Origin: Girardia tigrina
Taxonomy: Eukaryota
Direction of reading: 5' to 3'
DNA: 49,017 nucleotides
Assembly (NCBI GenBank): GCA_001938485.1
Contig: MQRK01219238.1
Location: 1 to 49,017 of the forward strand
The notes below the pieces were generated by a model. That model worked only from the letters and a program-made list of their open reading frames with translations, ran no database searches and had not been told where the DNA came from. Each line of letters opens with the position of its first letter. Position 1 is the stretch's first letter. Positions 1 to 29,175 of the stretch are shown piece by piece. Made by a program: the position numbers and the translations under genes.

Positions 1-600
1 CTACAAAGAATAAAGAATGTGTTTCAAAAAATCAAAGAATCAGGTTTGAGGATAAATCCAGAGAAATGTCAATTTCTAGTAGAAAAGACCAAGTTTTTTG
101 GCTACGTAATAAGTAAAGAGGATATATAAACTGATAAAACTAAGATTGATGCGATTGACAAGATTCAAAACCCATCATGTATTAAACATCTAAGGAGTTT
201 CTTGGGTTTGACAAATTATTACATGAAATTCATAAAATAATATGCAATGTATTCGAAAGTTTTAGAAGGCATTTGTGGTAAAAACAAGGATAAGATATGG
301 ACAAAAGAATGTAACGAAGCTTTTCAGAGATTAAAAGAAAGAATTGTTCAAACTCCAATCTTGGCGTATCCAGACTTCGACAATGAATTTATATTGGACA
401 CAGATGCAAGTTTCGATACGATTGGAGCAGTACTGTCACAAAAAGACTCGCGTGGAAGAGAAATAGTCATAGCATATGGTTCTCATAAGATGAATAAACA
501 TGAACTTTGTTATTGCATTACCAGAAAAGAATAACTTGCGATATATTATTTGACTCAGTATTTTAAGCATTTCCTATACGAAAAACCCTTTCTTCTTCCC
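1..600 (+). mobile_element. Ty3/Gypsy LTR-retrotransposon pol fragment (RT thumb/connection and RNase H), degenerate
   Basis: Frame 1 reads GLRINPEKCQF...LRSFLGLTNYY...FQRLKERIVQTPILAYPDFDNEFILDTDASFDTIGAVLSQ...YCITRKE*LAIYY...FKHFLY. In-frame stops at 127, 238 and 532. Confidence 0.92.
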
Positions 601-1281
601 GAACCAATTTTACTAAAAACGTTCAAGTTCTCATTGAAGTTTTTAATAACGTTAGAAACTGTTTTCTGAGTATTAAGAACATTTAAACAAGTCCCGTTTG
701 AATTTTTATTACAATCACATTTGAAGTCATTATGACTCTCAGAAAGTCTTTCATCGTTTGTCATCCTTCTAATTGGTTTTCTTATTTCTGTTTTTAATCA
801 TGATTATTTGAACAATTTTTCTAAATGATATTTTAAAATATTTAACCTCTAAAAAATATTAATCAAAAATAATAATTTTTACAATTTCTCAATAAATCCC
901 AAAATAATAAAAATGTCATCAAATTATTAAAAATGCATTTAATTTAAATTTTACTAAAAATTATTAAACTTAATTTTAATTTATGAAATTAAAAATATGA
1001 ACTTTTCAAATGATTATTTTAATTATGTTCGAATAATCAATGACTTTAAATTTAAATAAAAAATACCAATTTCCATCTGGGTGGGAGAATCACCATTCTA
1101 AGTTCAACATACTTAAATCAACATACAGCATCCATACATTTACACATTCAAACAATTTAAAATATTCCTCACACTGAGAAACCTTTACCTTTCTGGCAAT
1201 CGTTTACTGACTTGATTGTGAATTTTCTTGAAATAAACGAATAATTAATTCGCGACTTACTGTTTCTGACAACATATTCAT
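598..1281 (-). pseudogene. Intron-containing 5' fragment of a probable protein kinase gene, truncated at the Gly-rich loop (CDC7-like is tentative)
   Basis: Exons 1281-1261, 1226-1173, 1097-1067 and 787-~598 join in frame through canonical GT-AG introns of 34, 75 and 279 nt. There is one premature TAA in exon 2. The product ends ...NFNENLNVFSKIGSG, resembling kinase subdomain I. Confidence 0.55.
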
Positions 1282-3423
1282 GACAAATGAAATTTAAAAA
1301 TGAGTACTAAAATGAATTTTATTTTGATTTATTCAAACAACAGCCTACTTGATTAGTTTTTTTGTAATTTATGAATTTATGTTGGAGTTATAAAGATTTA
1401 AAGTTAGTAATATTTTTCGCAATCAGTCCTTAATTCGTTTTTTATATAACAAATAATTTTTTCTTTTAAAAAATTTTATTTTAAATGAAATGAGATAAAA
1501 ATGAATTGTTTGTGTGAGATATTATAAAATTAAATTTAAATTAATTAAATAAAATATTATATAATCAACAAATTTAGAATATTTATAAATTAGTATTATA
1601 TAAATATTACAGGATCGAGAACAAAGTTAACCTTTGACTCTCCTTTTATTTGGTATATAAATGATGTATGTGTGTTTGTAGTTTAGTTTTATTAAATATA
1701 TTTTAGTGCAGATCTTTTGTCTTCTAACAGTTTGATCAATAAAACTTTTTCGACTATTTTACTTGATGAGATGTTCGAGAATTCGTTTCGATGAAATGTT
1801 TTCTCTTTTATAAAATTATCAAATTTAAATTTTCCTATTAAAATTCGATATTTGATTTATACAAAGATTCGATTAATTGATTTGAAATGTCATCCGATTT
1901 TGATTGATCAAATAATTCTTGATCATATAACTCTTGAATCATGTTTGAGCCACCATGGGAGGTGATCTTTTGTCGGTCTGCCGGGCCTTGGAAATATAGA
2001 CAGTCACACAGTTGATAAAGAAAAGTTTAATCTTTGCCAACGTCCGAGAAACAACAAATGATCGGAGATTGCTAGATAGTATGTGTCTGTAATTTGAATC
2101 ATTTTTAGTTTGAAACTATTGGATTTTTATGAGATTTTTTCGCACTGATTAAAAATATTAAATATTTTTCAAAAATTAAGAGTTTAAATAAGTAAATTAA
2201 GAATTAAAATAAATAAAGCTATTATAGATATATATATAAAATGAGATTTCAAAAATATTTATGATTAAAAAAATCAAAAAAATAGATTTTAGCACACTAA
2301 AAAATGTTTTAAAAATGAAATATTTTTAATTTATGTCCCTCAATGTTTCGTTATAAAATACTATATGGACTAAGAAAATTAATTATTTTATTAAATAAAA
2401 TGGAACCGATTCAATCAAAGTTGTATGGGCTTCTATCAAAATGATCAAAGGCTTGAGGGCCAAATTTTTCTGGAATGTATCTTGGTCGAAGAGCGAGGAA
2501 ATAGTGTAATGTAAAACAAAGGCACTTATTAAAATAGTTGTGTAATAATATTATATTAATTTGCAAAATTGTTGTAAAAAATCAAAGATAATACAATTGT
2601 TACGATTTAATTAAAATAAATTTATATTAATTAATCACATAAGGACTCGACATGTGTTGGTATCAGAACCGGACGATATGAAACTGTGTACATAATTTTT
2701 GATTCAACATTACAAAAATGTTTGATGGAAAGCATATGGTAGATAAATAAATCCCAAATTTATCATTCACAGAGGAAATTTAATTGATTTTAGTCAAATA
2801 CTGAACAAATGTTACTGTTCCTGGAAAAATTGGTTAATCATCAGGTTTCTCACCGATTTTCTTCATATTGGGTTGGATATATAATAATTATCAATGTAAT
2901 TAATATATTGTAGTAACTTACCTTGCTGTATGATCCATTACATTATAGTTATATTTATTGTTCGGAATACAAGAATGTTATAAAAATTTTATAAGAATTT
3001 AAAATGAAATATACCAATTAAGATGTAGAAAATTTATTTAATATATAATTATTTGAAGATTGTAAAAAAAATTTTAAATTAATAAAATTTAACGAAACTA
3101 TTAAATAATTTTTGAAATTAATAAAATTTTTCGTGAGATTTAAAATTATAAAATTTGATAAAATTTAATTATTTGAGAATGCTAGTAGAGATTTTAAAAT
3201 TAATAAAATTTAGCCAAATTATTCAGTGTTTGATAGTTAGTGTACTTTAAAATTGGCAAATTTTATTGAAGGTAAAATTTTAATGATGTAACTGTGATAT
3301 TCTTCGTGTACTCGAGTGTGTGTGTGACAGTCTGTCGAATTGATCGGAGATTGGTTTTGTAAATTTTTTTTTGAAAATTACTTTTCATTATTCAATTGTT
3401 TAAATCGAGTATTTATTATAAAA

Positions 3424-3434
3424 TTGGCGCGAAA
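3424..3434 (-). promoter_or_regulatory. E2F-type motif (TTTCGCGCCAA) upstream of the chimeric ORF
   Basis: Exact match to the E2F consensus in otherwise very AT-rich DNA, about 160 bp before the ATG at 3595. Function untested. Confidence 0.35.
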
Positions 3435-3705
3435 TTTTTGTAATTAATTCGAAAGAAAGTCGCTATTGATTGTTTTTTTTGTTGAAACTAATAAAATTTT
3501 GTCCATTTCGGATCTTTCTTTTAATTCAAATGAAAGTGTTTTTCGAATTGCGAAAATTTTGAAGAAACGCAGTTTGGATGGTTATGTGTTTGAGATGGGA
3601 ATCGAAGATATCGGTTGCAAGTCGCCATCGTCCGGAAAACTGAAACATGTGTTCAAAAGACTCGGTGATTCGTTCGACTTAGATACGGAAGATCTTGAAC
3701 AAATA

Positions 3706-3843
3706 TTGAAATGCGGAATCGTGAATTCCAAAGATTCATGGCACAGTGGATCTAATCAGAGTTGTTGGGTCTATGTTAGCGGATTGGGATATGAATATTC
3801 CGAGGGCGATGTCACTTGTGTTTTTTCTCAATATGGAGAGATC
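3706..3843 (+). pseudogene. RBMX2: RBMX2/Snu17(Ist3) N-terminal RRM fragment embedded in a chimeric ORF (3466-4092)
   Basis: [46 protein letters not shown] matches the RBMX2 pattern [36 protein letters not shown]. Similarity stops before RNP1. Confidence 0.8.
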
Positions 3844-3981
3844 GACATTGACGGAATTTTGACGAGTTGCTTTAAGATTATGGAGAATGAGTGTTTGTCG
3901 CAGTTGTTTGAAACGGAGGACGGAGCTGGAACGGCGAGTCGCAGAGATCTGGCAATCGAGATTTATGAGTCAGGTAGCGAG

Positions 3982-4392
3982 GGTGATGGTAGTGAGTTTC
4001 GATCCTTTTCCCCCTGCGTCCGCAGTTCACCCCCAAGCGCCGATGCGCCGCAGCCACAAGTCCGCTGCGCCCGTTCTGTTTCCACCAGTTAAGGCTAGAG
4101 TTAGGTTAAGGTTAGGGTTAGGGTTTTCAAAGAAAAATAATAAAAATTAATTGCAGTGGAAATTTCAGAATGTTGTTTAAATAATCAGAATTCTGTAAGC
4201 GGTTCGAAACTCTTGTGATATAAATTAATTGTTATTTTAGATATTCTCATTGGTGCGAGCGCGAACGCAGCGATATTGGGGCTGCGGCACTCTGGTTGGC
4301 GATGCGAGAGCGAGCGCAGCATTGTGGCCGCGGCGGGTTGGCGCTGGGGGGTGGACTGCGGGACGCGGGGGGCTAAAATTCACTATCTCACC
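3982..4392. mobile_element. GC-rich foldback/MITE-like element with ~100-bp imperfect inverted arms and internal TTAGG(G) repeats
   Basis: The left arm ggtgatggtagtgagttt...cccctgcgtccgcagttcacccccaagcgcc mirrors the reverse complement of the right arm ggtgagatagtgaatttt...ccccgcgtcccgcagtccaccccccagcgcc. A gttaggttaaggttagggttagggtt run lies at about 4099-4125. No TSD found. Confidence 0.65.
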
Positions 4393-6160
4393 GGCGTCTG
4401 GTGAGCCCCAACGTCTCTTGTCCAATATTCTCATCATTATCGTTAGCCGATCATTTTTCAAGGCAATTTCGTTCATATTTTTGTTATAAATGTTCCATTT
4501 GAATTGATTGAGACAGATAATAGAGTATTCGTTATCATTATCGACATTATTTTGCTATAATTCGCATACTTTCTTGATCAGAATTTTAATGATGAAAATT
4601 GTCAATTCCAAAATGATTAGAAAAATTTGAATAAGCGACTTCGGATTGGGAAATAAATACAAATCATATTTTGAATTGACTGGTTCTAATAACAGTGAGA
4701 AATCGGTCCTCGAATTTTGAATTTCTTTGGAAAGCAATTCCCGTGAATTATCGACGACCAAATTTGTTGGTTGTTTTTGTAAAAAAGATGATCCATTCGA
4801 TTCAATCCCACAAAACGAAATAACTTCTTCGATGGTTGAGAAACTTTTCCGTATAATTTATTTGAAAATTTTAAATAACAAGACAAACATAAAACCTCGC
4901 GCCAAAATTTTATTTATATATTAATCGATTTAAACAAATCGATTTTTACAATTTTATTATTAAATTTTTTAACAAACAAGATCGATTTTTGTTCGACATA
5001 ATAATAAAAAATACAGTTTTTTTTTAATTTCAATATTTTACCCGTTTAAACTTAGAATTAGAATTAATTTCTTTTTTAAAGATAAAGCAAGAATAAAGCT
5101 TTGAAAACAGTTAAAATAAATATGGAATTAATCTCAAAAAGACCACATTAATTTAACTCCAGATTCGATTTTTTGATAGTTTGGGATAAATTGTAGACTT
5201 CTGTTCGAATATTCAAATAAAAATTATGAGATTGTTCATTATTTCGATTGCGGTTGGATTTCTTTTGTTCTGTAGCGGCGTTCGATTTCTCCATTTTCAA
5301 TTGATCAGAAATTTTGATTATCGAAAGGTTTGTTATTGGTGGAAATTCAATTTGTTTTCGTATATCGTTGGATTGGCTTTGTTTGTTCTTTTTTTTAAAT
5401 AGTTAACGTTCGATATTAGATATTTTCTTTTTCAATTTCTCATTTTTCAGGAATTTTTGAAATATAATTTTTGGGGTTAACTTCCATATGGGCCCCCCAA
5501 ATGTGAATCGAACATTCTCCCCCCTTCTGATCACTTGTGGTCAAATTCATACTTAATCATTCACAACAGTCCATTTCAATTTTTTGCTATTAGCAAAGTC
5601 ATACCAGGAACTCAAACATTTAAAAAACTAATTAAATTAAAATAAAAAAACATTTTTATGATACCCTTTAAAGAGAATACCATTAAATATTTCTTTAAAG
5701 TTGTCTTAAATACAGGAATAGTTTCCCTGCATAATGTATTCGATCAGCATTTAAATGTCAGAATGCCTGGGGCTATTAAACTAAAATACGTCATTCAGGT
5801 ACTGTAATACTAAATAATCGTCAAGTTGAAATAAAAAAATAAGAAACTTTCGGTGATATGCAATCGAATTTGGGTTTTCTTTCTTTTGAAAGAAATTATG
5901 GGAAATATCAGTGATGACCACCAACTAGCTGTTCCCACTCCTGTCAGAGATTTGAAACAAAAATATAACTATTAACTGTATTAATAACGGATCGATTATA
6001 ATCCGAGTGTACTCTGTAAGTACAGTTTTGAGAATCAATATTGTCAAGTCACTGTCACACATTAATTAAAAAAAGGTCAAAGAAAAGCCACCTAAACACT
6101 AAAATCATTAATTAAATAAAAATTACCCAAAATTAACCAAGATAATTTAAATTTCTTATA

Positions 6161-7789
6161 CTACCCAAATTCATATGTATTCGGACACGTAAAATAATTC
6201 TTATTAAAAATTTTAAATTATAAATAATATATACTTATTTGTATTATAGATGAATTAATTTGATATTTTACGATAATATAAATACAATTCTAAAATAATT
6301 TGAAGAAATCAAATAAAAAGGTTAACTAATAAAAATTTTATTCGCATTTAAAAATGTGTTCTCAAATTCAAAAGAATTCTGGCACTTAATAAAAATTATA
6401 ATATAAATGTAGGCAATGAATTATTTTAAATTCAATATGGATTATTAGTAAAAACACATGTAGTTATTATTGTTTAAATATTTCAGTCGATTAAATTTTC
6501 GTTATTTTTAAAATATGGTTCGTGGATAAAAGATGCATACGGAAATGTGTGAGAAAATATTTGCCATGTATGTTAAAGGAAAATCAGTAAAGGAAATTTC
6601 AAAAATTTTAGAGATAAGTAAATCGACGGTGTTCGATAACATTAAAAAAGCTAAATACCGTCAGAATAACTCATCGCCAAACAAATCTGGACGACCAAAG
6701 TTGACTTCCGCTACTGATAACCAGTGTTTGAAGAGGTTAATTCCTCAATATCGTCGTGCTACTGTTCAAGAAATCAACAAAAAATGGAGTATGCAAACAG
6801 GCATTTCTTCTTCTCCGTCTACTTGTCTACGTCGAATACATGAATTAAATTATTCATTCTACAAGGTAAGATTTTCTTAATGAAATATAAGCATTGTGTC
6901 TTTAAGGTTAAAACCAAACCGTTTCTGTGACCTTTTCAAAAGAAAAAGAGACTTGAATGGGTTCTTATCATAGTAAATGGAGCAAAAATGATTGGAATAA
7001 AGTTATTTTTCAGAGGAATCTCGTTTTGAATGTCTATGGGCGAAAATGGAAAATCGGTTTTAAGACTTAGTACCGAGTCATTATTATCGGACTGTTTAAA
7101 CCCAACTCTGAAATTTCCAGAAAGTGTAATGATTTTGGATTGTATGACAAGTAAAGGACTTGGCAGTCTTCACTTTATAGAGGGCACAATGAACTCTACA
7201 AAGGATACCGAGATATTAAGGGAAAGTCTCATCCCATCTATTACACAATATTTTGACAATGGAGATTTCATTTTTCAACAAGATGGAGCATCTTATCATA
7301 CTTCTAAATTTACAAAAACTTGGATGATGAAAAATAATATGTCCTTCTGGATATTGCCTTCAGGAAGCCCAGATTTAAGTCCAATAGAGAATGTTTGGGC
7401 AATTATGAAAAAGGAATTACGAAAAAACGTCCTAAAAAAATAAAATTGATTTGAAGAATAAAATTTTAGAGATATGGAATAGTTTTCCAATTGATAAATG
7501 TCAGGATTTATACAATTCAATGAATAGAAGAATGGAAGATGGTTACAAGATTTTTAATAGTAGGTGTCCGAATTATTTTGAATTTGAGAACAAATTTTTA
7601 AATGCGAATAAAATTTTTATTAGTTAATTTTTTTATTTGATTTCTTCAAATTATTTTAGAATTTAAATTTAGATTATCATAAAATATCAAATTAATTCAT
7701 CTATAATACAAATAAGTATATATTATTTATAATTTAAAAATTTTAATAAGAATTATTTTACGTGTCCGAATACACATGAATTTGGGTAG
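6161..7789 (+). mobile_element. Tc1-family (DD34E) DNA transposon, full length, IR/DR-type ~230-bp TIRs, inactivated transposase with an intron
   Basis: TA TSD at 6159-6160 and 7790-7791. TIRs start CTACCCAAATTCAT and carry an inner repeat of the terminal motif. The HTH exon starts at ATG 6515, followed by a 41-nt GT-AG intron at 6866-6906. Catalytic motifs read FSEESRF (first D mutated), QQDGA, then 34 aa to SPIE. Contains stops and frameshifts. Confidence 0.93.
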
Positions 7790-8093
7790 TATTTCATTGT
7801 TATTACTCTGAGGAGTTAGTTAATTTTCTTTTCATTAACAAATTGTAATTATTTAAAAATAATTAAAAATTTTAACATAATTTTAACTTTTTTTAATTAA
7901 ATTTTGATTTCAAGATTAATATAACTGAAATAGATTATATTTTAAAGTAAATAATTTCTCGAAATAATAAATTTCATCTATAATAAATATTTAATATGGT
8001 AAAAAAAATTTTTTCCTAAATTTTAAAATTAATATTATTTTAAAATAAATTGAATCAATTTTAAATAAGAAAATATTTTAAATATTTTGAAAA

Positions 8094-8590
8094 GTGTGAG
8101 GAATATTTTAAACTGTTTGAATGTGTAAATGTATTGATGATGTATGTTGATTTAACTATGTTGAACTTGGAATGGTGATTCTCCCATCCAGATGGAAATT
8201 AGTAATTTTTTTTAAATTTAAAGTGATTGACTATTCGAACAAAATTAAAATAATAATTTGATATGTTTAAATGTTTTAAATTAATAATTAAAATTAAGTT
8301 TAAAATGTTTTCATAAAATTTAAATTAAATTCATTTTCAAGAATTTAATAACATTTTAATATTTTGGGTTTTTATTGAGAAATAGTTTAAATTGTTATTT
8401 TTAATTAATATTTTTAAAAATTAAATATTTTAAAAAGATTTTGAAAATTTGTTCGAATAATCATGATTAAAAATAGAAATAATAAAACCAATTAGAACGA
8501 TGCCAAAAGATAAAAGGTCTTCTGAGAGTTGTAATGATTCTAAATGTGATAGTAATAAAAATTCAAATGAGACTTGTCTCAATGTTTTTA
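8094..8590 (+). repeat. Diverged inverted copy of 670-1175 (intron 2, exon 3, intron 3 and part of exon 4 of the kinase-like fragment)
   Basis: gtgtgaggaatattttaaactgtttgaatgtgtaaatg...aatggtgattctcccatccagatggaaatt...ccaattagaacgatgccaaaagataaaaggtcttctgagag aligns by eye with the reverse complement of 670-1175. Confidence 0.85.
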
Positions 8591-8649
8591 ATAAAAAGAA
8601 TTGTTTATTTTTAAAATGTGTATTATTTTAGAATAAATTTTAATTGATT

Positions 8650-10120
8650 TAGACATTATTTTTGAGATGCGAAATTAATTTCGCTTTATAATTAAATTTG
8701 CTAATATTTAATAATTTATGAATTACTGAATTATTTTTTTTAGTTTCTTCTTTAATGAATAAAAAATTACTATATATTATTAATAACTTTTAAAAATTAA
8801 TTTGCAATAGAATTAATTGCATTTAATTTTAATTTAAGAAAATCTGCCAAATATATATTTTTACTAGATTCAATAAATATTTTTTATTTAGTAAAAATGA
8901 ACCAAAAACCTTAAGATATACTATAAAATATATTAAAGTCAAAATATACTAAGAATATACTAATCAGAATATACGTCAGAATAAACGTATTCGTATTGCT
9001 ATATTGATAGGTCGAAGGCAGTTATATTGAGCTGATTGCATAAAAACTGCAAAAACTCTCCGTTTATTAATGCAATTTTCAACTCTTGATAGAAGTTTGA
9101 GAGAAGATTTAGATCACTTTGTCTTGTGGTTTGTAAGTTATTAAGTTATCATTTTAGTTGAAAAAAGTGCTGCGATAGTTTTTTCATTGATGATTCGAGC
9201 TTTGAAATGAGTTTTCAGTAACTCATTTGCCTCGATGGCTTCAACATACATAGATACAGTTTCAGAAATATTTTGGTAGCAGTGATTCTTTTTCAACAGC
9301 ATGCCGCTGGCCTCCATTGGATAAGAGATTCTTGACGAAACTTCATTTGGATGATTATTTGAAATATTATCGAAAATATCCCTTGAGCTACACGAAGAAG
9401 TCTCTGAATCGTTTTTAAGTAGGATTTTGAACTTCCTCGTTTGTTCATTGTGAGCTTCAGTGGAGTGTATTTCTTCAGCATTATTTTTCATGTATAGATG
9501 CAGTAGATTTTCACGATATGTGTGGATACATTTGGCACCTTAGAGCAATTTTTGAGAGGTAGGCCTTATTCTTGTAGTACAAGTGCCCCCAACTTTATAT
9601 AGATTTGATCCTTTTCGCAGGGCCTCGACAATTTCATACACTACAAAAATATAGTAACTTTTTTATTCACCAAAGAATAAAGTTAGTTTTATATTTTCTT
9701 GTAATAAAATGTTTCTTTAATGTTTAAATAAAGTTAAAACAAAGTTAAATTACATACTAAATTAAAAAAAAAGATTTAAAATAATTTAATAATTCATATA
9801 TAATCAATCATTTGCAAAATAAGTCCAAATACAAAATTGAAAATTATAAGACAAATTAATTCTCACACGAAATTAATTATAATAATTTAAAATTATTAAA
9901 ATATTGTATGTTTTCATTAAAGAAGAAACTTAATTTAATATTTTCTTATAATAAAATGTTTTTCTCAATGTTTTAAATAAAACAAAGTTAAATTGCATGC
10001 TAAATTTAAAAAAAATATTAGAAATAGTTCAATAATTCATAAATAACTAATTATTAGAGAAATTAGTCAAAAAACAAAATTGAAAATTATTAGAGAAATT
10101 AATTCCAACGCGAAATCAAT
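8650..10120 (-). mobile_element. Degenerate Mutator (MULE)-like element: transposase linker fragment 9141-9491 between related AT-rich inverted/tandem repeats
   Basis: HSTEAHNEQTRKFKILLKNDSETSSCSSRDIFDNIS...IAALFST resembles the region between FLYWCH and DDE in animal MULEs. agtttcttctttaatgaa (~8742) recurs inverted at ~9913. A ~245-bp diverged tandem duplication spans 9690-10120. Confidence 0.45.
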
Positions 10121-10306
10121 TCTGCTATCTTATTTTTAAGTTTCAGTTTTGAGAAATTTAATCATAATTTGAATGTTTAGATAAATGTTAGCGAATTGAA
10201 TATAAAAAAATTTGAAATTTAGTTCGAATTGGTTTGAAATAAAAATTTTGTGCTAATATAAACGAATTTGATTTTGAATATCGAAAACGATATTAACGCT
10301 ACTAAC

Positions 10307-10650
10307 ATGGCGACTCACACTACAATTGATATTTTCACGAATCAACTTTTACCTAAAAATTCAGGAGACGTTTATTTAAGAATGCGAGACATTCTTTAAT
10401 TTTACGAGAATTGCAAAATCCAAACAGGAGATCATTATCTCTGGTGTTGGATATAGATTGGAAAGATAAGTTTAAAGCGGTCTATAAGACAATAGACGGT
10501 TACCAAGATCGATTACGAAAAGCGATTGTTTGGTCATCATACTTATTTAAATACCTGACTGAGTCGTGTCGGTACAGAATAAAGGACGGCATACAGAAAA
10601 TCTTCGTTAAAAAAATAGAAAATTTTGCAGAGGACTTTAAAATGGATAGA
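10307..10650 (+). mobile_element. Probable degenerate Gypsy gag N-terminal fragment
   Basis: Begins CA|TGGCGAC (LTR-end/PBS-like). A frameshifted reading gives GDVYLR/ECETFFNF...DKFKAVYKTIDGYQDRLRKA...FVKKIENF. Recognised by resemblance only. Confidence 0.35.
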
Positions 10651-12429
10651 GGAGAAAAAAGAGAAAATAAAAGGAGTCCACGAAGTAAAAAATGTGACAG
10701 AAGACGTGAATGTGGTAAGAGACAATGGGATGCTAAACAGATACCGGAACTATTGAGACGCAATGATAAAAAACAAATAATATTTTTGATTTAAGTTTCA
10801 TAAATTTAAAATTGCTAAATGTCAAAGTTGCATCAATATTGCATCTATTATTTATATCTACCGATCTTGCTTAATTATTAAAGTTTATTTTCGAATATTT
10901 ATTTAAGACATCTATGGTGTTAAATCTATATGAAAAAGAAATAGCAAGTATTCACAAATATGTATTTTAAATAAACTATGTTGATAAGAGAGCCTGTGCA
11001 GCGTGGCTGTGGCACCCTGTAGTCAATGGGTGGTGGTGGGGTCAAGGGGGGAATTTATTAATCCAACCTCTTCCGGTAGAATTTCCACTCGTATGTCGTC
11101 GTATAGTATTTTATTGTCCATGAAGGTGATAGATGAAGACAATATATGATCCATGAAGACTTACGGACAACGACTGACTTTCGGAAACGAATCATCACCC
11201 GCGAACATCAGAGAAGCCTCAGACTGCGTCTCGAAATCAGCGCACAAAACCCCCAGCGTACCGAGCCGTCTTTCTCCGACCACAGAGCGACCGTGCATCT
11301 CAACAGCGACTCGAGAATGTCGCATCTCGCCACTGAGATGGTGGTCAAGTGATTGAGCGCCCGCACGTTCCTCCACGGTCTCGACATATTATTGGCCTTA
11401 ACGCAATCTCATGCTCCGATTTGACCTTGATAAACGCATAGAAACGCATGAAGTTGTTAATAAGATGAAGGAAGGTGAAGTGTGCTGAATTCAATCAAGC
11501 ATAGAATTGCATTCTAATGTTCTTTATGAAGAGAAGGTTGACCTCTTCCAGTTTGCTTTTGTCATATCTCTTCCTGAATTGTATTCCAATCAGATCAGTT
11601 ATCTGGAATAAATTCGAAAATTTCTAAAGAAATCCTTCAGAGTCAATGCGAATCTTGTATGCTGAGATTGTTGAGGTTCGATTTTGAACGTGAGCAAAGA
11701 TCATCGGAATCTGAAACGTAGTTCCACAGCAGAGATCGATATGAGTCGGTTATTTCGAGAAAATCATAGAATTCCAACGGGAAAATAATCATTCCAATAA
11801 AAAACCTATTTATTTCAACAACGCATCCACAGAACACAGTGGAAATCGTTCACATATCAATTGTTCTTTATTAACTTTGCGGAAATTGTTTTCTCTATCA
11901 ATCTCGAGTGGACCTTGTTTGTTTCTAGTGTATGTTTTTTACTTTTTTTGATAGTTGCGAAGAGAAGTTTGAATTGATTTGTTAATTTTTTCATTCAAAA
12001 GAACAGTTGTAATATTTATTAAGTAGTGAAAATAATTTTTACTTAAAAAATAATAATTAAATAAAAAAAATAATTAATAAAATAAAAAATATAATTTCTA
12101 AATGGAATTTACAAAAATTATAAATGAAATATCACAGCAGAGTGGTTCTGAATAGTAAAAAAATGTAAGACCGACTGCTTCTGATTGACCGAATTTTTTT
12201 ATAAAATCGACTGAATCGATTCAAACTTTTTTCATTTGTTTCGTTTTGTTTAGTCGAACTAATTTGGATTGTATTGGCGCCAACCTTATTTTGAATTGAT
12301 ATCGAAAGTCGCCATTAAAAATTGTTTGCGAGAAAAATTAATTGTTTTGTATGCAAGTTCGAATTTTTATTTGTTCTGTCGTGAAGAATCGCCATTTTTT
12401 TGAATATTGAATTGTTTTTGAATCGAATA

Positions 12430-12540
12430 ATGGCAGATTCAGATAAATTAAATTTAGACAGCATTATTGGCCATCTCTTGGAAGTTCGTGGATCACGACC
12501 AAAAAAGTGTTCAATTGACCGAAAAGGAATCGCAGGATTT
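12430..12540 (+). pseudogene. PPP1C: Protein phosphatase 1 catalytic subunit N-terminal fragment (~36 codons, frameshifted), with upstream promoter-like motifs
   Basis: [24 protein letters not shown]/(fs)KSVQLTEKE compared with PP1alpha [34 protein letters not shown]. Upstream are TTGGCGCCAA (12274, E2F-like) and CGCCATTTT (12391, YY1-like). No catalytic domain follows. Confidence 0.88.
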
Positions 12541-12839
12541 AAAAATAAAAAACGCAGCTGGATTGTCTATAGAAGAGCTATTGAAGATGAAATTGATATG
12601 CATCGATTATAAATCAAAAGGAATGGAGTGGTTTACATTGATTTTTAATATGTTTTTTAATTTAAAGTGTTTTAAATCTTAAATTTTTAAATTTTAAAAA
12701 CTTTGTTGGCAAAGTAGAGTTTCGTCTGCAAAAAGAATGGATATAAAATTTTTATATTTAACGAATACGAAATGGAATGCGGAAGGTTAAAGAATTACAA
12801 CCTGCAATTCAGAGTAACTGCGTCCCAATATTATTGGAG

Positions 12840-22500: not shown

Positions 22501-25500
22501 TTTTCCATTCATTAATATTATGTATTCATTTGTTCATAAAAATCGATATTGAAATTTTGGAAATAAACAATTTTAATACATTTTTTATTAATTTACTTGT
22601 TATCATTAAATTATTCAAATTATGATTCAGATTTATAATTATAAGATTAATGAAATTTTTGAAATATTTTTTCACCGTCGAACTTTTTTTAATTTAATTC
22701 GAAAATTCAATTTTTAAAAATATTTATTTATTTTTATTAATTTTTTAATAAAATTAATTTTATTTTTTACTTATGCAATTATTTAAAGAAATTTTTTTGA
22801 AAAAAATGATTGATTTTTGTATTTTAAATTTGATTAATTAAAATATTATTATTAAAAATTTGATTAATTGAAAAATTTATGAAAAAACATACAGAATTTT
22901 ATATTGTTAAATGGACATTATATTAACAAATGGTCCTAATATTATGTGTGTATGTTGTGTTTGCAGGTATGTATGTATGTGTGCTAAGGGGTAGAAAATA
23001 TTTTTTCATATATTTTGTATTTTCAAGTGGACATTTGAGTAAGTATGTTTTTTAAATTAACATTTTGATTGGCTAAATTTTATTTTTCTTTCAATTTTAG
23101 ACATGGATTTATTATCAAATGGATACATTATATAATTTAAAAAACATACCTACTCAAATGTCCATTTGATAATAAAATGTCCACTTGAGAATAGAAAATA
23201 TATGAAAACATATTTTTTACATGTTAACACACATACATACATACCTGCACACACAACATACACACAATATTAGGACCATTTGTTAATATAATGTCCATTT
23301 AACAATATAACATTTTGTATGTTTTTTCTTAAATTTTTCAATTAATCGAATTTTTAATAAAAATATTTTAATTAATTAAATTTAAAATATAAAAATCAAT
23401 CATTTTTTTTCAAAAAAATTTCTTTAAATAATTGCATAAGTAAAAAAATAAAATTAATTTTATTAAAAAAATAATAAAAATAAATAAATATTTTTAAAAA
23501 TTGAATTTTCGAATTAAATTAAAAAAGTTCGACGATGAAAAATTTTTTCAAAAATTTCATTAATATTATAATTAAAAATCTGAATCATAATTTGAATAAT
23601 TTAATGGAAACAAGTAAATTAATAAAAAAATGTATTAAAATTGTTTATTTCCATAATTTCAATATCGATTTTTATTAACAAATGAAACATAATATTAATG
23701 AATGGAAAATTAAATTATATCTTTCAATTTTTCTTTAAAATTTATTATATTTAAATTAACAAATGTTGAAAAAAATTATTATTTATTGTATTTAAATTAA
23801 TCGATATCAAAATAATATTTACCTTCAATTAATTTCCAAAAATCAAAAAATCAACATAAGACCACCCCTCCACGCCCCTGTTAGAGTCTAAATGGCGCCC
23901 CCAAGATGACTTTTATAAATGTGTAGTTTCGTGTACAAGAATTAGCTGCATTATGATTAAGTTTCATCCTTAACACTGTCACAAGGTCTGTGATGCAGAA
24001 GAACTAAATGGATTGGTTTGGTATGTATTATTAACGTGTACACTGCAACATATTGCTGCTAATGCTATTTGTAATATTACCATGTCGTGTTGTTAGACAT
24101 AGATGATGCAGTAGGCTAACAGGCATAATATTTTTGGGCTGTGGAGAATGCTACTGAGACTTAAGATTTCACTTTCTACTTACTGCTTGTACAAGTTTTG
24201 TCTGTCTTTAAAGTCCAATGGGGTTTAATACACTCCAGTTACCACCCTATATTACAGTCATTTATTAATATTAAATATATCCGGCCGGAGTAAACCCAAA
24301 TATTATTTAACGTCGGTAATAATGACGGGTCAATAAAACTTCATTATTTTTAATGGCTATTTATTTTTTGGTGCTGCTTACCGCTGGAACAAGATAGCGG
24401 GGAGCGTAAAATTAGTAGGGCTAGTACTACCTTTATCCTTTTTTTGCGTCCCCTGAAAGTTTTCTTGCCCCCCCCACGCACCAAAATCCTAATCCGCCAC
24501 TGTATATACTACCCAAATTCATATGTATTCGGACACGTAAAATAATTCTAATTAAAAATTTTAAATTATAAATAATATGTGCTTATTTGTATTATAGAGG
24601 AATTAATTTGATATTTTACGATAATGTAAATATTCCATATTGCTAAAATTTTATTCTTCAAATCAATTTTATTTTTTTAGGACGTTTTTTTTCGTAATTC
24701 CTTTTTCATAATTACCTAAACATTCTCTATGGGACTTAAATCTGGGCTTTCTGAAGGCAATGTCCAGAAGGACATTATTTTTCATCCAAGTTTTTGTAAA
24801 TTTAGAAGTATGATAAGATGCTCCATCTTGTTGAAAAATGAAATCTCCATTGTCAAAATATTGCATAATAGATGGATGAGACTTTCCCTTAATATCTCGG
24901 TATACTTTGTAGAGTTTATTGTGCCCTCTATAAAGTGAAGACTGACAAGTCCTTTGCTTGTCATACAACCCCAAATCATTACACTTTCTGGAAATTTCAG
25001 AGTTCGGTTTAAACAGTCCGATAATAATGACTTAAGACCGATTTTCCATTTTCGCCGATAGACATTCAAAACGAGATTCGTCTGAAAAATAACTTTATTC
25101 CAATCATTTTTGCTCCATTTACTATGATTAAGAACCCATTCAAGTCTCTTTTTCTTTTGAAAAGGCCACAGAAACGGTTTGTTTTTAACCTTAAAGAAGT
25201 GTTACGCAATGCTTATATTTCATTAAGAAAATCTCACCTTGTAGAATGAATAATTTAATTCATGTATTCGACGTTGACAAGTAGACAGAGAAGAAGAAAT
25301 ACCTGTTTGCATACTCCATTTCTTGTTGATTTCTTGAACAGTAGCACGACGATATTGAGGAATTAACCTCTTCAAACACCGGTTATCAGTAGCGGAAGTC
25401 AACTTTGGTCTTCCAGATTTGTTTGGCGATGAGTTATTCTGACGGTATTTAACTTTTTAATGTTATCGAACACCGTCGATTTACTTATCTCTAAAATTTT

Positions 25501-28500
25501 TGAAATTTCCTTTACTGATTTTCCTTTAACATGCATTGCACATATTTTCTCACACATTTCCATATGCATCTTTTTTCCACGAAACATATTTTAAAAATAA
25601 CGAAAATTTAATCGACTGAAATATTTAAACAATAATAACTACATGTGTTTTTACTAATAATCCATATTGAATTTAAAATAATTCATTGCCTACATTTATA
25701 TTATAATTTTCTATTAAGTGTCCGAATTCTTTTGAATTGAAAAGCAGATGTCCGCATTCTTTTGAATTTGAGAACAAATTTTTAAATGCGAATAAACTTT
25801 TTATTAGTTAACTTTTTTATTTGATTTCTTCAAACTATTTTAGAATTGTATTTAGATTATCGTAAAATATCCAATTAATTCATCTATAATACAAAAAAGT
25901 ACATATTATTTATAATTATCAAATTAATATGAAAAAATATCGTTTTGATATGAATAATATCTATTTAATATGAAAAAATCTTTTTTTTAAAAATACACTT
26001 CCAATTTAACTTACCACCAAGGAATAAGTTTTAATAACTATGAATAAAAATTTTACATTTGGAGTCTATTTTGCATAAGAAATTACGATTTTTTTCTGGT
26101 TAAATTTATATTTTTTTCATATGAAGTTAATCCGAATTTTAATACTGAAATTTCGTCAGTATTTTCTCACACACTAAATAGAGAGGATCGATCGGCAATT
26201 TTGATGAAGCGACAAATAAGCGGCTTCAGTCGCCATTCGCAATCGATCATCCATCAATTTGGATATTTATCTCTGTATTGAAAAATTTTCAAAAAACAAA
26301 CGATCAGCTTCACTTGGAGTTTGTTCGTGGTGATGGCCCGACGGAAAGACGAACTAAATATAAGACTTTAGACAATATAATTCATACTATTGTGTCAAGG
26401 TATCGAAACAGAGACAGAATGGAATATCTGGGAGCGATTGCGTCGAATTTATCGTTAAATTAAGTAATGATTAATAAACACTTGTCTTAATTTAAAAATT
26501 TTTATTTATAGTAATTTTAAATTATTAAATTTAAAATTAAATAATAAAAAAATTGAAGAAATTTAAATAAAAAAACTAAATAAAAATAGAAACTTGATTG
26601 ATCAAAAATACCGGCACCAAAAAGTCGCGCACGCCTTTCTGACAATTAAGATGTATAATTTACTATAGAAGTTGTACCCAACAACATTTTTTAACCCCTA
26701 ACATACATAAATACACACAAAAATACATGAAAACAAGACCCAAAAAACAAAATATTTTGAGATATCAATTCGTGAAACCGCAAAATATTTTTAATATTGT
26801 ATATATATATATATTATATTTATTATTATTTATATTATTTATATTATATTTATTATTGAAAAATGTTGTATTGAAATGATAATTGTAAAGAATATATATT
26901 CTATGGAGTTTTAATAAAATAACTTTTAACAATTTGATTTTATATATATATATATATATGAAAATCATTGTTTTGCGTTCTAAGAATCCTACGGGCTACG
27001 ATGACTAGCATATTCCATTTGCTACCCAGTTACATTGTATTTGTCTCTCAGAGGATACACTTCGTGTTCGTAGTGCGTGCTATCAAGCTAATTGAACAAA
27101 TAAATATTACAAATCTATTACTTACCGTAGAAAATTAAGGTAAGTAATTTATCTATATATTTCATAAATACATAAATTTTCTTAAACTTAACTTAAAATA
27201 CTCGTAGTCTTCATATTATATATTAATGACAAAAAGTATATCACCGACCTTAACCTTATACCTTCACCATACTTCATAGTTTTCCCTCTTTGCCCATCTA
27301 AAAATCTGGTCAGCTTAGTTATGATTGTAATATCTAATAGGGTATTATTGATTTTAAGAAAAAGACCTATCTTTGAGATATTTTCTGTATTTTTTCACTC
27401 AAACGTTTTAATTGATTTATATAGAGATCAGAGTGAACAGTAGGTAGATAATTGAGTTCTAAACAAAAAAGCTTTTTTTGAAATGAGTAATTTACCGTGA
27501 ATCGTTGGAACCCAACAGAAAAATAAAGTCGATGGAGCTAGATTTTTTAAGTAACTGCTGAAGTTTTTTATTTTACATCTCTTGGTCTTCGATAACGAAA
27601 ATCTGAATTTGTCAATTAAATGATTTTTTCGTGCTTCAAATGACATCCATAAATGTAAGATTTTAGCGAATTTCACCGTGGAACTAAGTTAGGCCTTGTC
27701 AACAATTTGTTTCATAAAAGTGTTTAGTTGACATGGGTAATTCTTTATAGATTATTTTGAATCAATAAAAATTGTATGAAATATAAAGCAATAATTTGCT
27801 GATATTATTCTTGCATTTATATAATTGAAAATATTCATTTGAATGCTGTAAATTAACTTGGACACAAATTAGGAACTCAGAAACAATATCATCGAATTCA
27901 ATCCAAGTAGCTCAATCTCAATCAACTAATCCTAAAACGACAATTGATCTCACATCAGACAGCGATGAAGAAGATAAAAGAGCAATTAAACCACCGCTAC
28001 CATCGTTGTTACCATCCAACCAAACCTCACATCCATCAATCAATTTCAATAATAATCACTCTAATTATTCATCTTCCTCTTCGTATATTCCTTCATTTCC
28101 ACATGTCAATTCTAACAATAACAATCAAAACCATTCAATTCATCGTACATTTGTATCGCATCATCAATACATCGCTCCAAAGATGCCTATCTCAAATAAC
28201 GCTTTCTTGAAGATTCCAGGGGTTCACAGTGTTAATAGGAATATCAATTATTTCCAATCAACCTCTTCATCATCAGCAGTGGTAGCGGTACCGCCAGTAG
28301 AACCACTTATATCAGTATCGGCAACAGTACCAGGATCAACATCAACTGTTTCAGTAGTTTCCAACACCAGTGTCTCTCATTCAAATCCCTTCCAATCATC
28401 TGCGGGTATCAATAACCCAGGTACATCGTCACAACCACCTCAGAATAAGATGCTACCCCCATACCTCTGGATGCATCAGCCCAATCACCGCCAACCATAT

Positions 28501-29175
28501 CCCGGCAGTCGTCTGGCAGCCGCGCACCCGCAACAGCATCCACACAGACTTAGTGGAGATATTCTCAACTGCTACATGCCTCCACTAAAGTCTTGTTTCA
28601 CTCCAAACCAATCCTACTCCAACATGATTCCAGCAGCTTCTACCGCCGCCAGCAGCTGTCACCAAAACAACAATCCTTTCACTGCTGCATCTAATTTACT
28701 GCCGAAGCCGATCAAGATCGATCCTCATCTTAATATTCGTCACCGATTCGATAACGATTTAGCAAAATTTTTAGCCGCAACCGCTAGTAATAGCGGAAAC
28801 AGTGGTGCTGGTCACAGCTGCAAATCCGCTATCAATTCGAAATACTACATAGCGACTAAAGGAAACAAAAGGCACAAATCGAAGGCGGAATCCAAAAAGA
28901 AACAGCATACTCTCTCACAAAATAAAATTTCTCGCAGAAGTACGCGGATTCTCAATCAACATCGAAAAGTCTACAGAGAAAAAAGTCTTTCAGAAGAAGA
29001 AGAAGATGATGATGAGGATGAGGATGAGTTTGATAGCCAATCGTCGATGGAAAGTAATGATTCGGATGTAGTTCGTGTCGGGCGAAATTCTCAGAAACGT
29101 CGAAATAATTTCGATGACAGCAGTTCATCGAGCTCGTTTGGTGTTAATCGGAAACGAAAAAGTAATTTAAATTGA
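16551..29175 (+). CDS. PIAS: PIAS-family SUMO E3 ligase (Su(var)2-10/Siz-like), spliced gene join(16551..16583,16665..18388,27873..29175), 1019 aa
   Basis: SAP-like N-terminus, PINIS (PINIT) motif, and SP-RING VSLLCPVGKTRIECPIRGVSCQHLQCFDA...WKCPVC. The phase-0 intron 16584-16664 and phase-2 intron 18389-27872 are both GT-AG and frame-compatible (3060 nt total). Exon 3 has the PIAS-type SIM TIDLTSDSDEED. Confidence 0.8.
16665..18388 (+). CDS. PIAS: PIAS exon 2: SAP, PINIT, SP-RING/MIZ zinc finger and acidic SIM-like VILIGESDDEDE
   Basis: 572-aa ORF with a clear SP-RING motif and RHPRPINIS. Confidence 0.95.
19899..20321. mobile_element. hAT (Charlie-like) MITE spanning an assembly gap
   Basis: TIR CAGTGGTTCTCAAC / GTTGAGAACCACTG, perfect 8-bp TSD ATTTAACC (19891-19898, 20322-20329), and subterminal CGCGGAACAC repeats. 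Confidence 0.92.
21175..21425. repeat. AT-rich minisatellite (~22-bp unit aattaattaataaataatcaca)
   Basis: Visible tandem units with a ~66-bp higher-order pattern. Confidence 0.85.
22347..23859. repeat. ~1.5-kb palindrome (foldback element; ~700-bp arms, ~70-bp loop) in PIAS intron 2
   Basis: ttatgttgattttttgatttttgga (22347) pairs with tccaaaaatcaaaaaatcaacataa (23859). The inner ends 23029-23059 pair with 23133-23163. The same family recurs at ~19760-21050 and 22040-22240. Confidence 0.9.
24440..24502 (-). mobile_element. hAT-type terminus remnant (CAGTGGCGGATTAGG...)
   Basis: ...gcccccccacgcaccaaaatcctaatccgccactg resembles a hAT end. The partner end was not identified. Confidence 0.4.
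24509..25917 (-). mobile_element. Second, partly deleted copy of the Tc1 element at 6161-7789, antisense in the PIAS intron
   Basis: Same TIR start CTACCCAAATTCAT after TA. Transposase motifs MFRGKKMHMEMCEK, FSDESRF, SVMIWGCM and QQDGA. Has a 48-nt intron at the same position. Deletion at ~24630, and the outer part of the other TIR is missing. Confidence 0.92.
26197..26636 (+). mobile_element. MULE transposase C-terminal remnant plus probable terminus
   Basis: HPSIWIFISVLKNFQ...GDGPTERRTKYKTLDNIIHTIVSRY...MEYLGAIASNL* is a typical animal MULE C-terminus. A GC-rich terminus-like aaaaagtcgcgcacgcc ends at ~26636. Confidence 0.75.
27873..29175 (+). CDS. PIAS: PIAS terminal exon: SIM, Ser/Asn/Pro-rich low-complexity tail, acidic patch and basic NLS-like segments
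   Basis: The open frame extends 5' of the listed ORF to an AATTAG acceptor. Encodes KTTIDLTSDSDEED. Phase matches the exon-2 donor. Confidence 0.78.

What the first reader, a model, noticed from the sequence alone, without database searches (positions are those of the whole stretch)
598..12620. Mosaic of promoter-bearing 5' fragments from unrelated housekeeping genes: candidate animal 'Pack-TE' gene-capture system
Seen: within 12 kb lie truncated N-terminal pieces of PP1 (12430), RBMX2 (3706) and a four-exon kinase-like gene (1281-598, duplicated at 8094). There are also unidentified coding-like pieces at 1860-2080, 4394-4890 and 11146-11850. The PP1, RBMX2-containing and 4890 pieces are preceded by E2F-like motifs (12274, 3424, 4897). 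Each piece breaks off abruptly into other gene pieces or TE sequence, and the kinase piece keeps its introns. Established: plant Pack-MULEs and Helitrons capture intron-containing gene fragments. Inference: a DNA-level mechanism is collecting promoter-proximal ends of broadly expressed genes into arrays, which could yield chimeric transcripts or small RNAs against the parent genes.
Basis: partly seen in the sequence, partly recalled or inferred. Interest (0 to 1): 0.8.

Follow-up and report, generated by a model that had tools for sequence, protein, structure and literature searches.

The report
Retrotransposon LTRs stuffed with host mRNAs
In this flatworm genome, the terminal repeats (LTRs) of a retrotransposon family have copied spliced pieces of many housekeeping-gene messages into themselves and scattered them in hundreds of copies; this is RNA-based gene shuffling on an unusual scale, not the DNA-level 'Pack' capture first proposed.

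Summary
The gene pieces are real, but this is not one Pack-type DNA element. The 12 kb is a nest of separate insertions. Four of them (3278-4086, 4297-5514, 10982-11443, 11447-12628) belong to one dispersed family of about 0.5-2.2 kb: TG...CA ends, 5-bp target duplications, a shared GC-rich end, and variable cargo (PP1, PAICS, RBMX2, HPS5, cullin, homeobox, LRR, PPP phosphatase).

Capture was from spliced RNA. The parent PAICS gene has a 46-nt intron that cargo copies lack exactly. Its N-half gives 152 matches, its C-half one. The elements are LTRs, mostly solo: 17 loci, including this window, share the same polypurine tract directly before the left end (about 0.2 expected). Cargo is mostly sense and often in frame with the LTR end.

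The 'four-exon kinase' is a Tc1-like transposase start split by another repeat, so the intron argument fails. The origin of the E2F-like motifs is unresolved. No PBS or autonomous partner was found, and no reads were laid.

Other first-stage notes saw such elements elsewhere in this genome (unchecked). LTR-mediated mRNA capture is known; cargo inside the LTR at this scale appears to be a new variant.

The parts
575..670 (-).
   Evidence: 1149 candidates at 87-97% aa identity, contiguous with 1174-1432 in other contigs
671..1173 (-). 503-bp high-copy repeat, TG...TA ends, 5-bp TSD CTGAG, probably a solo LTR of another family; splits the Tc1-like frame
1174..1432 (-). Terminus and ATG (1281) of the Tc1-like element
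   Evidence: (4423 candidates, fixed end near 1432)
3278..4086 (+). W1: right part of a cargo LTR (left part displaced by a repeat at about 2945-3280). Holds E2F-like site 3424, unidentified 'gene Y' 5' piece to about 3697, RBMX2 aa 19-62, and the GC-rich right end ending CA
3424..3434 (+). E2F-like site; the commonest state among copies
3995..4086 (+). Conserved GC-rich right end (inferred U5), with a small hairpin about 15 nt before the terminal CA
4297..5514 (-). W2: complete cargo LTR, a 3' LTR. Left end TGTTCGATT at 5514, E2F-like site at 4898, 86-codon open frame running into the GC-rich end at 4297
5515..5526 (-). Polypurine tract (AAGGGGGGAGAA) directly before the W2 left end
   Evidence: same junction at 17 loci across 4 left-end subtypes
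5527..6156 (-). Probable remnant of the internal region upstream of the PPT; no identifiable protein
   Evidence: one other contig (C218248) matches to 5579; inference
6157..7792 (+). Tc1 transposon with long TIRs and TA flanks; independent insertion
   Evidence: HTH_Tnp_Tc3_2, DDE_3
8095..8597 (+).
10982..11443 (-). W3: about 460-bp member of the family with the GC-rich end at 10982; cargo unidentified
11447..12628 (+). W4: truncated copy of the 1.9-kb PP1::PAICS::LRR element; lacks the first 13 bp and is cut at PAICS codon 2
12274..12283 (+). E2F-like site, downstream of a CCAAT-type box near 12183 that is intact in other copies
12430..12535 (+). PP1 catalytic subunit N-terminal piece, from the ATG
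12623..12628 (+). First two codons of the PAICS (SAICAR synthetase) piece, which runs about 190 codons in full copies

Best explanation
The elements are LTRs, mostly solo, of an LTR retrotransposon lineage that captures host mRNA pieces into the LTR itself.

Shown: TG...CA ends, 5-bp TSD, conserved left and right ends, a PPT before the left end in a minority of copies, spliced cargo, and modules swapped between subfamilies.

Inferred: left end = U3 with a promoter, GC-rich end = U5. Reverse transcriptase switches template from the element RNA onto co-packaged mRNAs, probably during minus-strand strong-stop synthesis. It then runs towards the mRNA 5' end and must jump again, which would give sense, intronless, 5'-enriched pieces stacked in series. 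Cargo inside the LTR is duplicated at every replication and survives LTR-LTR recombination, so it builds up as hundreds of solo copies that then decay neutrally.

More weakly inferred: the cargo lies in a translated leader that reads out of the 5' LTR into ORF1/Gag, which would select for in-frame fusions.
For: TSD exact in 8 of 11 complete copies and 1 mismatch in one more. PPT junction at 17 loci against about 0.2 expected, across 4 left-end subtypes. Parent PAICS has a 46-nt GT-AG intron at C239305:6098-6164, the only such site in the genome; every held cargo copy that matched the junction pattern is spliced. The same contig holds the only AIRC half, against 152 SAICAR matches. RBMX2 and HPS5 patterns fit intron loss. 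8 of 9 recognisable cargos point towards the GC-rich end; HPS5 is opposite. No poly(A) tracts and no long TIRs. The frame in register with the terminal CA has 98 stops against 142 and 173 in the other two frames, and is the host frame in several lineages. PP1::PAICS is open in L010. Listed end variants differ by 3 nt. Copies are 85-96% identical with equal change at all codon positions.
Against: No tRNA-type PBS after right ends: 16 of 433 rows have TGG, chance 4.1%; that pattern does not cover the W2 subtype, where most PPTs were seen. No two-LTR copy and no gag or pol linked to these ends was seen. Intron loss is proven for one gene only. CCAAT- and E2F-like motifs look like promoter DNA, and homology between the upstream modules is weak (z 3.4 for one pair, not significant for the rest). 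The terminal frame shows no third-position bias, and frame 0 was longest in only 14 of 36 ends. Some PPT loci may be haplotype duplicates.
Confidence: 0.78

Rival explanations
1. Mixed origin: the units are LTRs, but the promoter-like 5' modules (CCAAT, E2F) were taken from host promoters at DNA level, by repair or conversion, or from upstream read-through transcripts; only downstream pieces came from mRNA. This is compatible with the best explanation.
For: Upstream modules of PP1, gene Y and W2 are only weakly alike. Motif content resembles cell-cycle promoters (own knowledge). HPS5 cargo is antisense in L022.
Against: The intact PP1 gene C219852 matched only the coding part, and no E2F core was found 135-165 nt before its ATG. 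This is a weak negative, because that gene may be a paralogue or diverged.
Confidence: 0.3
2. Non-autonomous cut-and-paste elements of an integrase-type DNA transposon (Ginger2/TDD-like Pack-TIR) that picked up cDNA during gap repair.
For: TG...CA ends with 5-bp TSD occur in TDD-4/5 (PMC2836005). Most copies are flanked by a TSD with no internal region, and no PBS was seen.
Against: Ginger elements have 40-270 bp TIRs; here only about 4-10 bp match. A recurring PPT is not expected. Serial, sense, 5'-rich spliced cargo is hard to get from gap repair.
Confidence: 0.1
3. One reading: DNA-level Pack-MULE or Helitron-like capture of promoter-proximal gene ends into one array.
For: Multi-gene mosaics, 5' enrichment, and a hairpin near one end.
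Against: Intron precisely missing. The 'intron-keeping kinase' is a split transposase. The TSD is 5 bp, where MULEs make about 9 bp and Helitrons none (own knowledge). PPT present. The window is a nest of separate insertions.
Confidence: 0.05
4. Assembly chimera.
For: Fragmented assembly (255,254 contigs); no reads were laid.
Against: The same junctions recur in dozens of contigs at 85-96% identity with different TSDs. Two DNA runs from different samples hold 60-65% of the sampled words of 1440-5600.
Confidence: 0.02

Closest known systems
LTR-mediated retroposition by template switching (Tan et al. 2016, PMC5131818; maize Bs1, human FAM8A1 retrocopy, Plutella Pxyfem PMC9674220)
   Same: Partial spliced mRNAs, multi-gene chimeras, further amplification as non-autonomous elements, integrase-type ends.
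   Different: There the cargo replaces part of the internal region between two LTRs, and the described cases are few-copy. Here it lies inside the LTR, persists as solo LTRs, and reaches over 100 copies per gene piece with many genes involved.
Foreign sequence inside LTRs: Cassandra, Helenus and Ajax TRIMs (PMC10886601); barley BARE-2 (PMC13317346)
   Same: The LTR itself holds captured sequence; 5-bp TSD in several of them.
   Different: Those carry one small-RNA gene piece or another element's sequence, not serial protein-coding mRNA pieces. No short two-LTR TRIM structure was seen here.
Pack-MULE, Pack-CACTA and animal Pack-TIRs (Tan et al. 2021, PMC8277862)
   Same: 1-2 kb non-autonomous units with multi-gene, GC-richer cargo.
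   Different: Those are DNA-level and TIR-bounded; 370 cases in 100 animal genomes, almost all single-copy. Here capture is RNA-level, with no long TIRs and with a PPT.
Burro giant Gypsy elements of planarians (PMC6431247)
   Same: Planarian LTR elements with host-derived domains and, from the stated sizes (25 kb internal, over 30 kb total), kilobase-long LTRs; too long to assemble in these contigs.
   Different: The described Burro cargo is in the polyprotein or accessory ORFs. No link between these LTRs and Burro was tested.
Ginger2/TDD DNA transposons (PMC2836005)
   Same: TG...CA termini; 5-bp TSD in TDD-4/5.
   Different: TIRs of about 50-180 bp and 4-bp TSD in animals; no PPT.

Membership tests
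LTR retrotransposon (solo / 3' LTR) | TG...CA termini | tested here: met
   10 of 11 complete copies TG...CA, one TG...TA
LTR retrotransposon (solo / 3' LTR) | 4-6 bp TSD of fixed length | tested here: met
   5 bp; exact in 8 of 11, one mismatch in 1
LTR retrotransposon (solo / 3' LTR) | Polypurine tract before the 3' LTR | tested here: met
   17 loci share the junction, about 0.2 expected; window 5515-5526
LTR retrotransposon (solo / 3' LTR) | Primer-binding site after the 5' LTR | tested here: inconclusive
   TGG after right ends at chance level; W2 subtype and non-tRNA priming not covered
LTR retrotransposon (solo / 3' LTR) | Two-LTR copy with gag-pol between the LTRs | not testable with these tools
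LTR-mediated retrocopy | Parent intron precisely lost | tested here: met
   PAICS 46-nt intron; RBMX2 and HPS5 consistent but parents not verified
LTR-mediated retrocopy | No poly(A) tail or LINE hallmarks | tested here: met
   No run of 10 or more A in six complete elements
LTR-mediated retrocopy | Microsimilarity at switch points | not testable with these tools
   Parent sequences could not be fetched
LTR-mediated retrocopy | Cargo between two LTRs, replacing internal ORFs | tested here: not met
   Cargo lies within one TG...CA unit with no terminal direct repeat
Pack-MULE / Pack-TIR | Long TIRs | tested here: not met
   Only about 4-10 bp terminal similarity
Pack-MULE / Pack-TIR | Genomic (intron-keeping) cargo | tested here: not met
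Helitron | 5'-TC...CTRR-3' ends and no TSD | tested here: not met
   TG...CA ends with 5-bp TSD
Ginger2/TDD | 50-180 bp TIRs | tested here: not met
Burro giant Gypsy | These LTRs flank a Burro-type polyprotein | not tested
   No Burro LTR sequence on hand; Grohme 2018 not held

The most novel reading that the evidence does not exclude
An LTR lineage that routinely swaps host mRNA 5' ends into its U5/leader and translates them in frame as variable N-terminal extensions of its polyprotein. It would sample housekeeping-gene start regions as interchangeable modules and leave a genome-wide library of promoter-linked chimeric gene starts as solo LTRs, possibly a source of piRNAs or new genes.
Probability: 0.35. 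Interest if true: 0.85.

Novelty: new variant of a known kind. Interest (0 to 1): 0.66.

Why it matters
Known animal gene-capture cases are few and mostly low-copy. Here single housekeeping genes have over 100 broken 5' copies, and at least eight genes appear in just 70 sampled loci. Because the cargo sits in the LTR, it stays beside a promoter-like region and outlives the element. That offers a large natural record of reverse-transcriptase template switching, a possible route to chimeric genes and to small RNAs against parent genes in a stem-cell-rich animal, and a practical hazard: these copies will confuse gene counts, RNAi design and read mapping in this genome. Expression and function were not shown, and the sampled copies decay neutrally.

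Tried and rejected
Readings dropped:
- A 3-bp TSD with CTG...CAG ends; TG...CA with 5 bp fits better.
- A CDC7-like identity for the 'kinase', once the empty site showed a continuous transposase-like frame.
- TTCTC as a TSD of W2; it is the PPT.

Tests that found nothing:
- Rfam, RNAalifold and covariation on the right end: no family, no consensus fold; the 6-bp hairpin is 86% paired but not above shuffles.
- RNA-editing bias: not seen.
- Amino-acid-level selection on cargo or on the terminal frame: not seen.
- Gene Y: unidentified.
- A direct DNA or protein hit of cargo to the parent PAICS contig was not listed among the capped candidates; the intron pattern found it instead.

Limits:
After that I used coordinate and pattern searches only and fetched no loci by other tools.
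- The two halves of the split transposase were searched separately, not joined.
- N stretches were left alone, and no full-element consensus was built.
- The costly representative-protein search was not needed.
Full report
Setting. The window is contig C219238 of a 1.43-Gb, 255,254-contig, AT-rich genome. The best protein hit for a window gene is from a tapeworm, so the host is most likely a flatworm; the species was not determined.

Observation. PP1 aa 1-26 begins at 12430. RBMX2 aa 19-62 lies at about 3709-3845, so it is an internal piece fused behind the 5' end of an unidentified 'gene Y'. E2F-like motifs are at 3424, 4898 and 12274. All these pieces are multi-copy.

The 'four-exon kinase' is not real. 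671-1173 is a 503-bp repeat with 7658 candidates and a 5-bp TSD, and only this repeat recurs at 8095-8597. Without it, 1281 to 579 is one frame, present in over 1000 candidate copies and contiguous in other contigs. It reads as a Tc1-type helix-turn-helix start, by motif only, since Pfam was silent on the halves. A second Tc1 fills 6157-7792, and other repeats lie at about 1563-1730 and 2945-3280. The region is a nest of insertions.

The real unit. Copies elsewhere define elements of 1.6-2.2 kb. Eleven complete ones start TG and end CA (one TA). The 5-bp TSD is exact in 8, has one mismatch in 1, and 2-3 mismatches in 2. All share a homologous GC-rich right end of about 90 bp. Many share a left end TGTTYGATT...GGGGG (889 rows genome-wide, control 37). 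A strict right-end pattern gives 433 rows. Rows overcount loci, but exact patterns also miss decayed copies, so hundreds to a few thousand copies is a fair range.

Four members lie in the window: W1 3278-4086 (+, left part lost), W2 4297-5514 (-, complete), W3 10982-11443 (-), and W4 11447-12628 (+, a cut copy of a PP1::PAICS::LRR element). Cargo differs between subfamilies and is swapped as modules. Pfam names SAICAR synthetase, PP1, RRM, homeodomain, metallophosphatase, LRR, cullin C-terminus and HPS5. There are no long TIRs, terminal direct repeats or poly(A) tracts.

Capture is from spliced RNA. The SAICAR half of PAICS gives 152 matches, nearly all broken and ending at or before model position about 190. 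The AIRC half gives one, on C239305. That contig has two stop-free SAICAR exons 46 bp apart. A pattern for an intron at that codon found exactly one site in the genome, a GT...AG of 46 nt at C239305:6098-6164. All held cargo copies matching the junction pattern lack it precisely. RBMX2 (114 matches, most ending at one residue; candidate parent with only a 109-aa open frame) and HPS5 (stop-free matches break at model 195/196 while cargo runs through) fit the same reading, but their parents were not verified. PAICS also gives a direct measure of 5' bias for one gene. The bias is not absolute, given the cullin, homeobox and phosphatase pieces.

The units are LTRs. A search for a purine run before the left end returned 25 contigs. 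Seventeen share the same junction, GGGGGAGAA-like directly before TG, across four left-end subtypes; about 0.2 are expected. The window is one of them (5515-5526), so W2 is a 3' LTR. Only a few per cent of left ends have the tract, and most complete copies have TSDs, so most are solo LTRs.

The matching test at the right end was negative: TGG follows 16 of 433 rows, against 4.1% by chance. That pattern misses the W2 subtype and non-tRNA priming, so the PBS remains open. No two-LTR copy or pol gene was linked to these ends. Giant Gypsy elements of the Burro type (PMC6431247) are a candidate partner, untested.

How it probably works. Shown: ends, TSD, PPT, splicing, and sense orientation in 8 of 9 recognisable cargos. 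Inferred: reverse transcriptase leaves the element RNA for co-packaged mRNAs, as in the known template-switch route (PMC5131818), but does so within the LTR. If this happens while copying U5 towards the RNA 5' end, each switch ends at an mRNA 5' end and forces another jump, which would stack 5' pieces in series. Cargo in the LTR is doubled each cycle and kept in solo LTRs.

PP1::PAICS is open in L010. This suggests a translated leader into Gag. It is not proven: lineages are few, frame 0 is longest in only 14 of 36 ends, and there is no third-position bias. After insertion, copies decay neutrally.

Promoters. The E2F-like site is the commonest state in copies. Whether it is the element's own promoter or host-derived is unresolved. 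Upstream modules are weakly alike (z 3.4 for one pair only). The best intact PP1 gene matched cargo only over coding sequence and lacked the motif at the same spacing, but it may be a paralogue.

Comparison. It works like LTR-mediated retroposition but fails the 'between two LTRs' feature. Small-RNA pieces and another element's sequence inside LTRs are known. Animal Pack-TIRs are DNA-level and rarely multi-copy. Ten paper searches found no report of serial protein-coding mRNA cargo in LTRs or of this family; the library is incomplete and Repbase was not on hand. Silencing RNAs from LTR-made retrocopies have a precedent in a moth but were not tested here.

Several first-stage notes describe similar TG...CA elements elsewhere in this genome, mostly as 'LTR-less'. 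They are unchecked and not counted as support.

Limits. Two DNA runs from different samples hold 60-65% of the words of 1440-5600. The split transposase was searched in halves, not joined.

Verdict. A real, abundant, RNA-level capture system in LTRs; new variant of a known kind; interest 0.66.

Noticed in passing
window:16665-18389 (+): Intronless 575-codon frame with a zf-MIZ domain (PIAS-like), 52% GC in a roughly 28% GC background; a second long frame lies at 27829-29172.
   Followed up: partly
window:671-1173 and 8095-8597: 503-bp repeat with TG...TA ends and 5-bp TSDs, over 7000 candidates; probably a solo LTR of another family.
   Followed up: partly
window:2658-2670 (+): TGGTATCAGAACC, close to an initiator-Met tRNA primer-binding site, a few bases after a CA; perhaps a remnant of an unrelated LTR element.
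   Followed up: no
window:4088-4296: TTAGGG-like repeats, followed by a 46-bp second GC-rich end-like segment between W1 and W2, which lie tail to tail.
   Followed up: no
window:13654-14176: 260-bp tandem duplication at over 99% identity; recent or an assembly artefact.
   Followed up: no
window:6157-7792 and about 24505-25925: Two copies of one Tc1 family in opposite orientation, about 92% identical.
   Followed up: partly
G000:C177659:10991-11119: RBMX2-like piece inside a reported 1204-aa open frame; may be an N gap or a polyprotein carrying the cargo. Could not be read.
   Followed up: no
table: Many RBMX2-cargo copies sit in stop-free frames of 200-250 aa despite only 50-70% aa identity to the query.
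   Followed up: no
G000:C219266, C248852, C220382: Tandem arrangements with two right ends or two cargo copies 1-2 kb apart in the same orientation.
   Followed up: no
window:19500-23800: Cluster of AT-rich inverted repeats (MITE-like) around an assembly gap.
   Followed up: no
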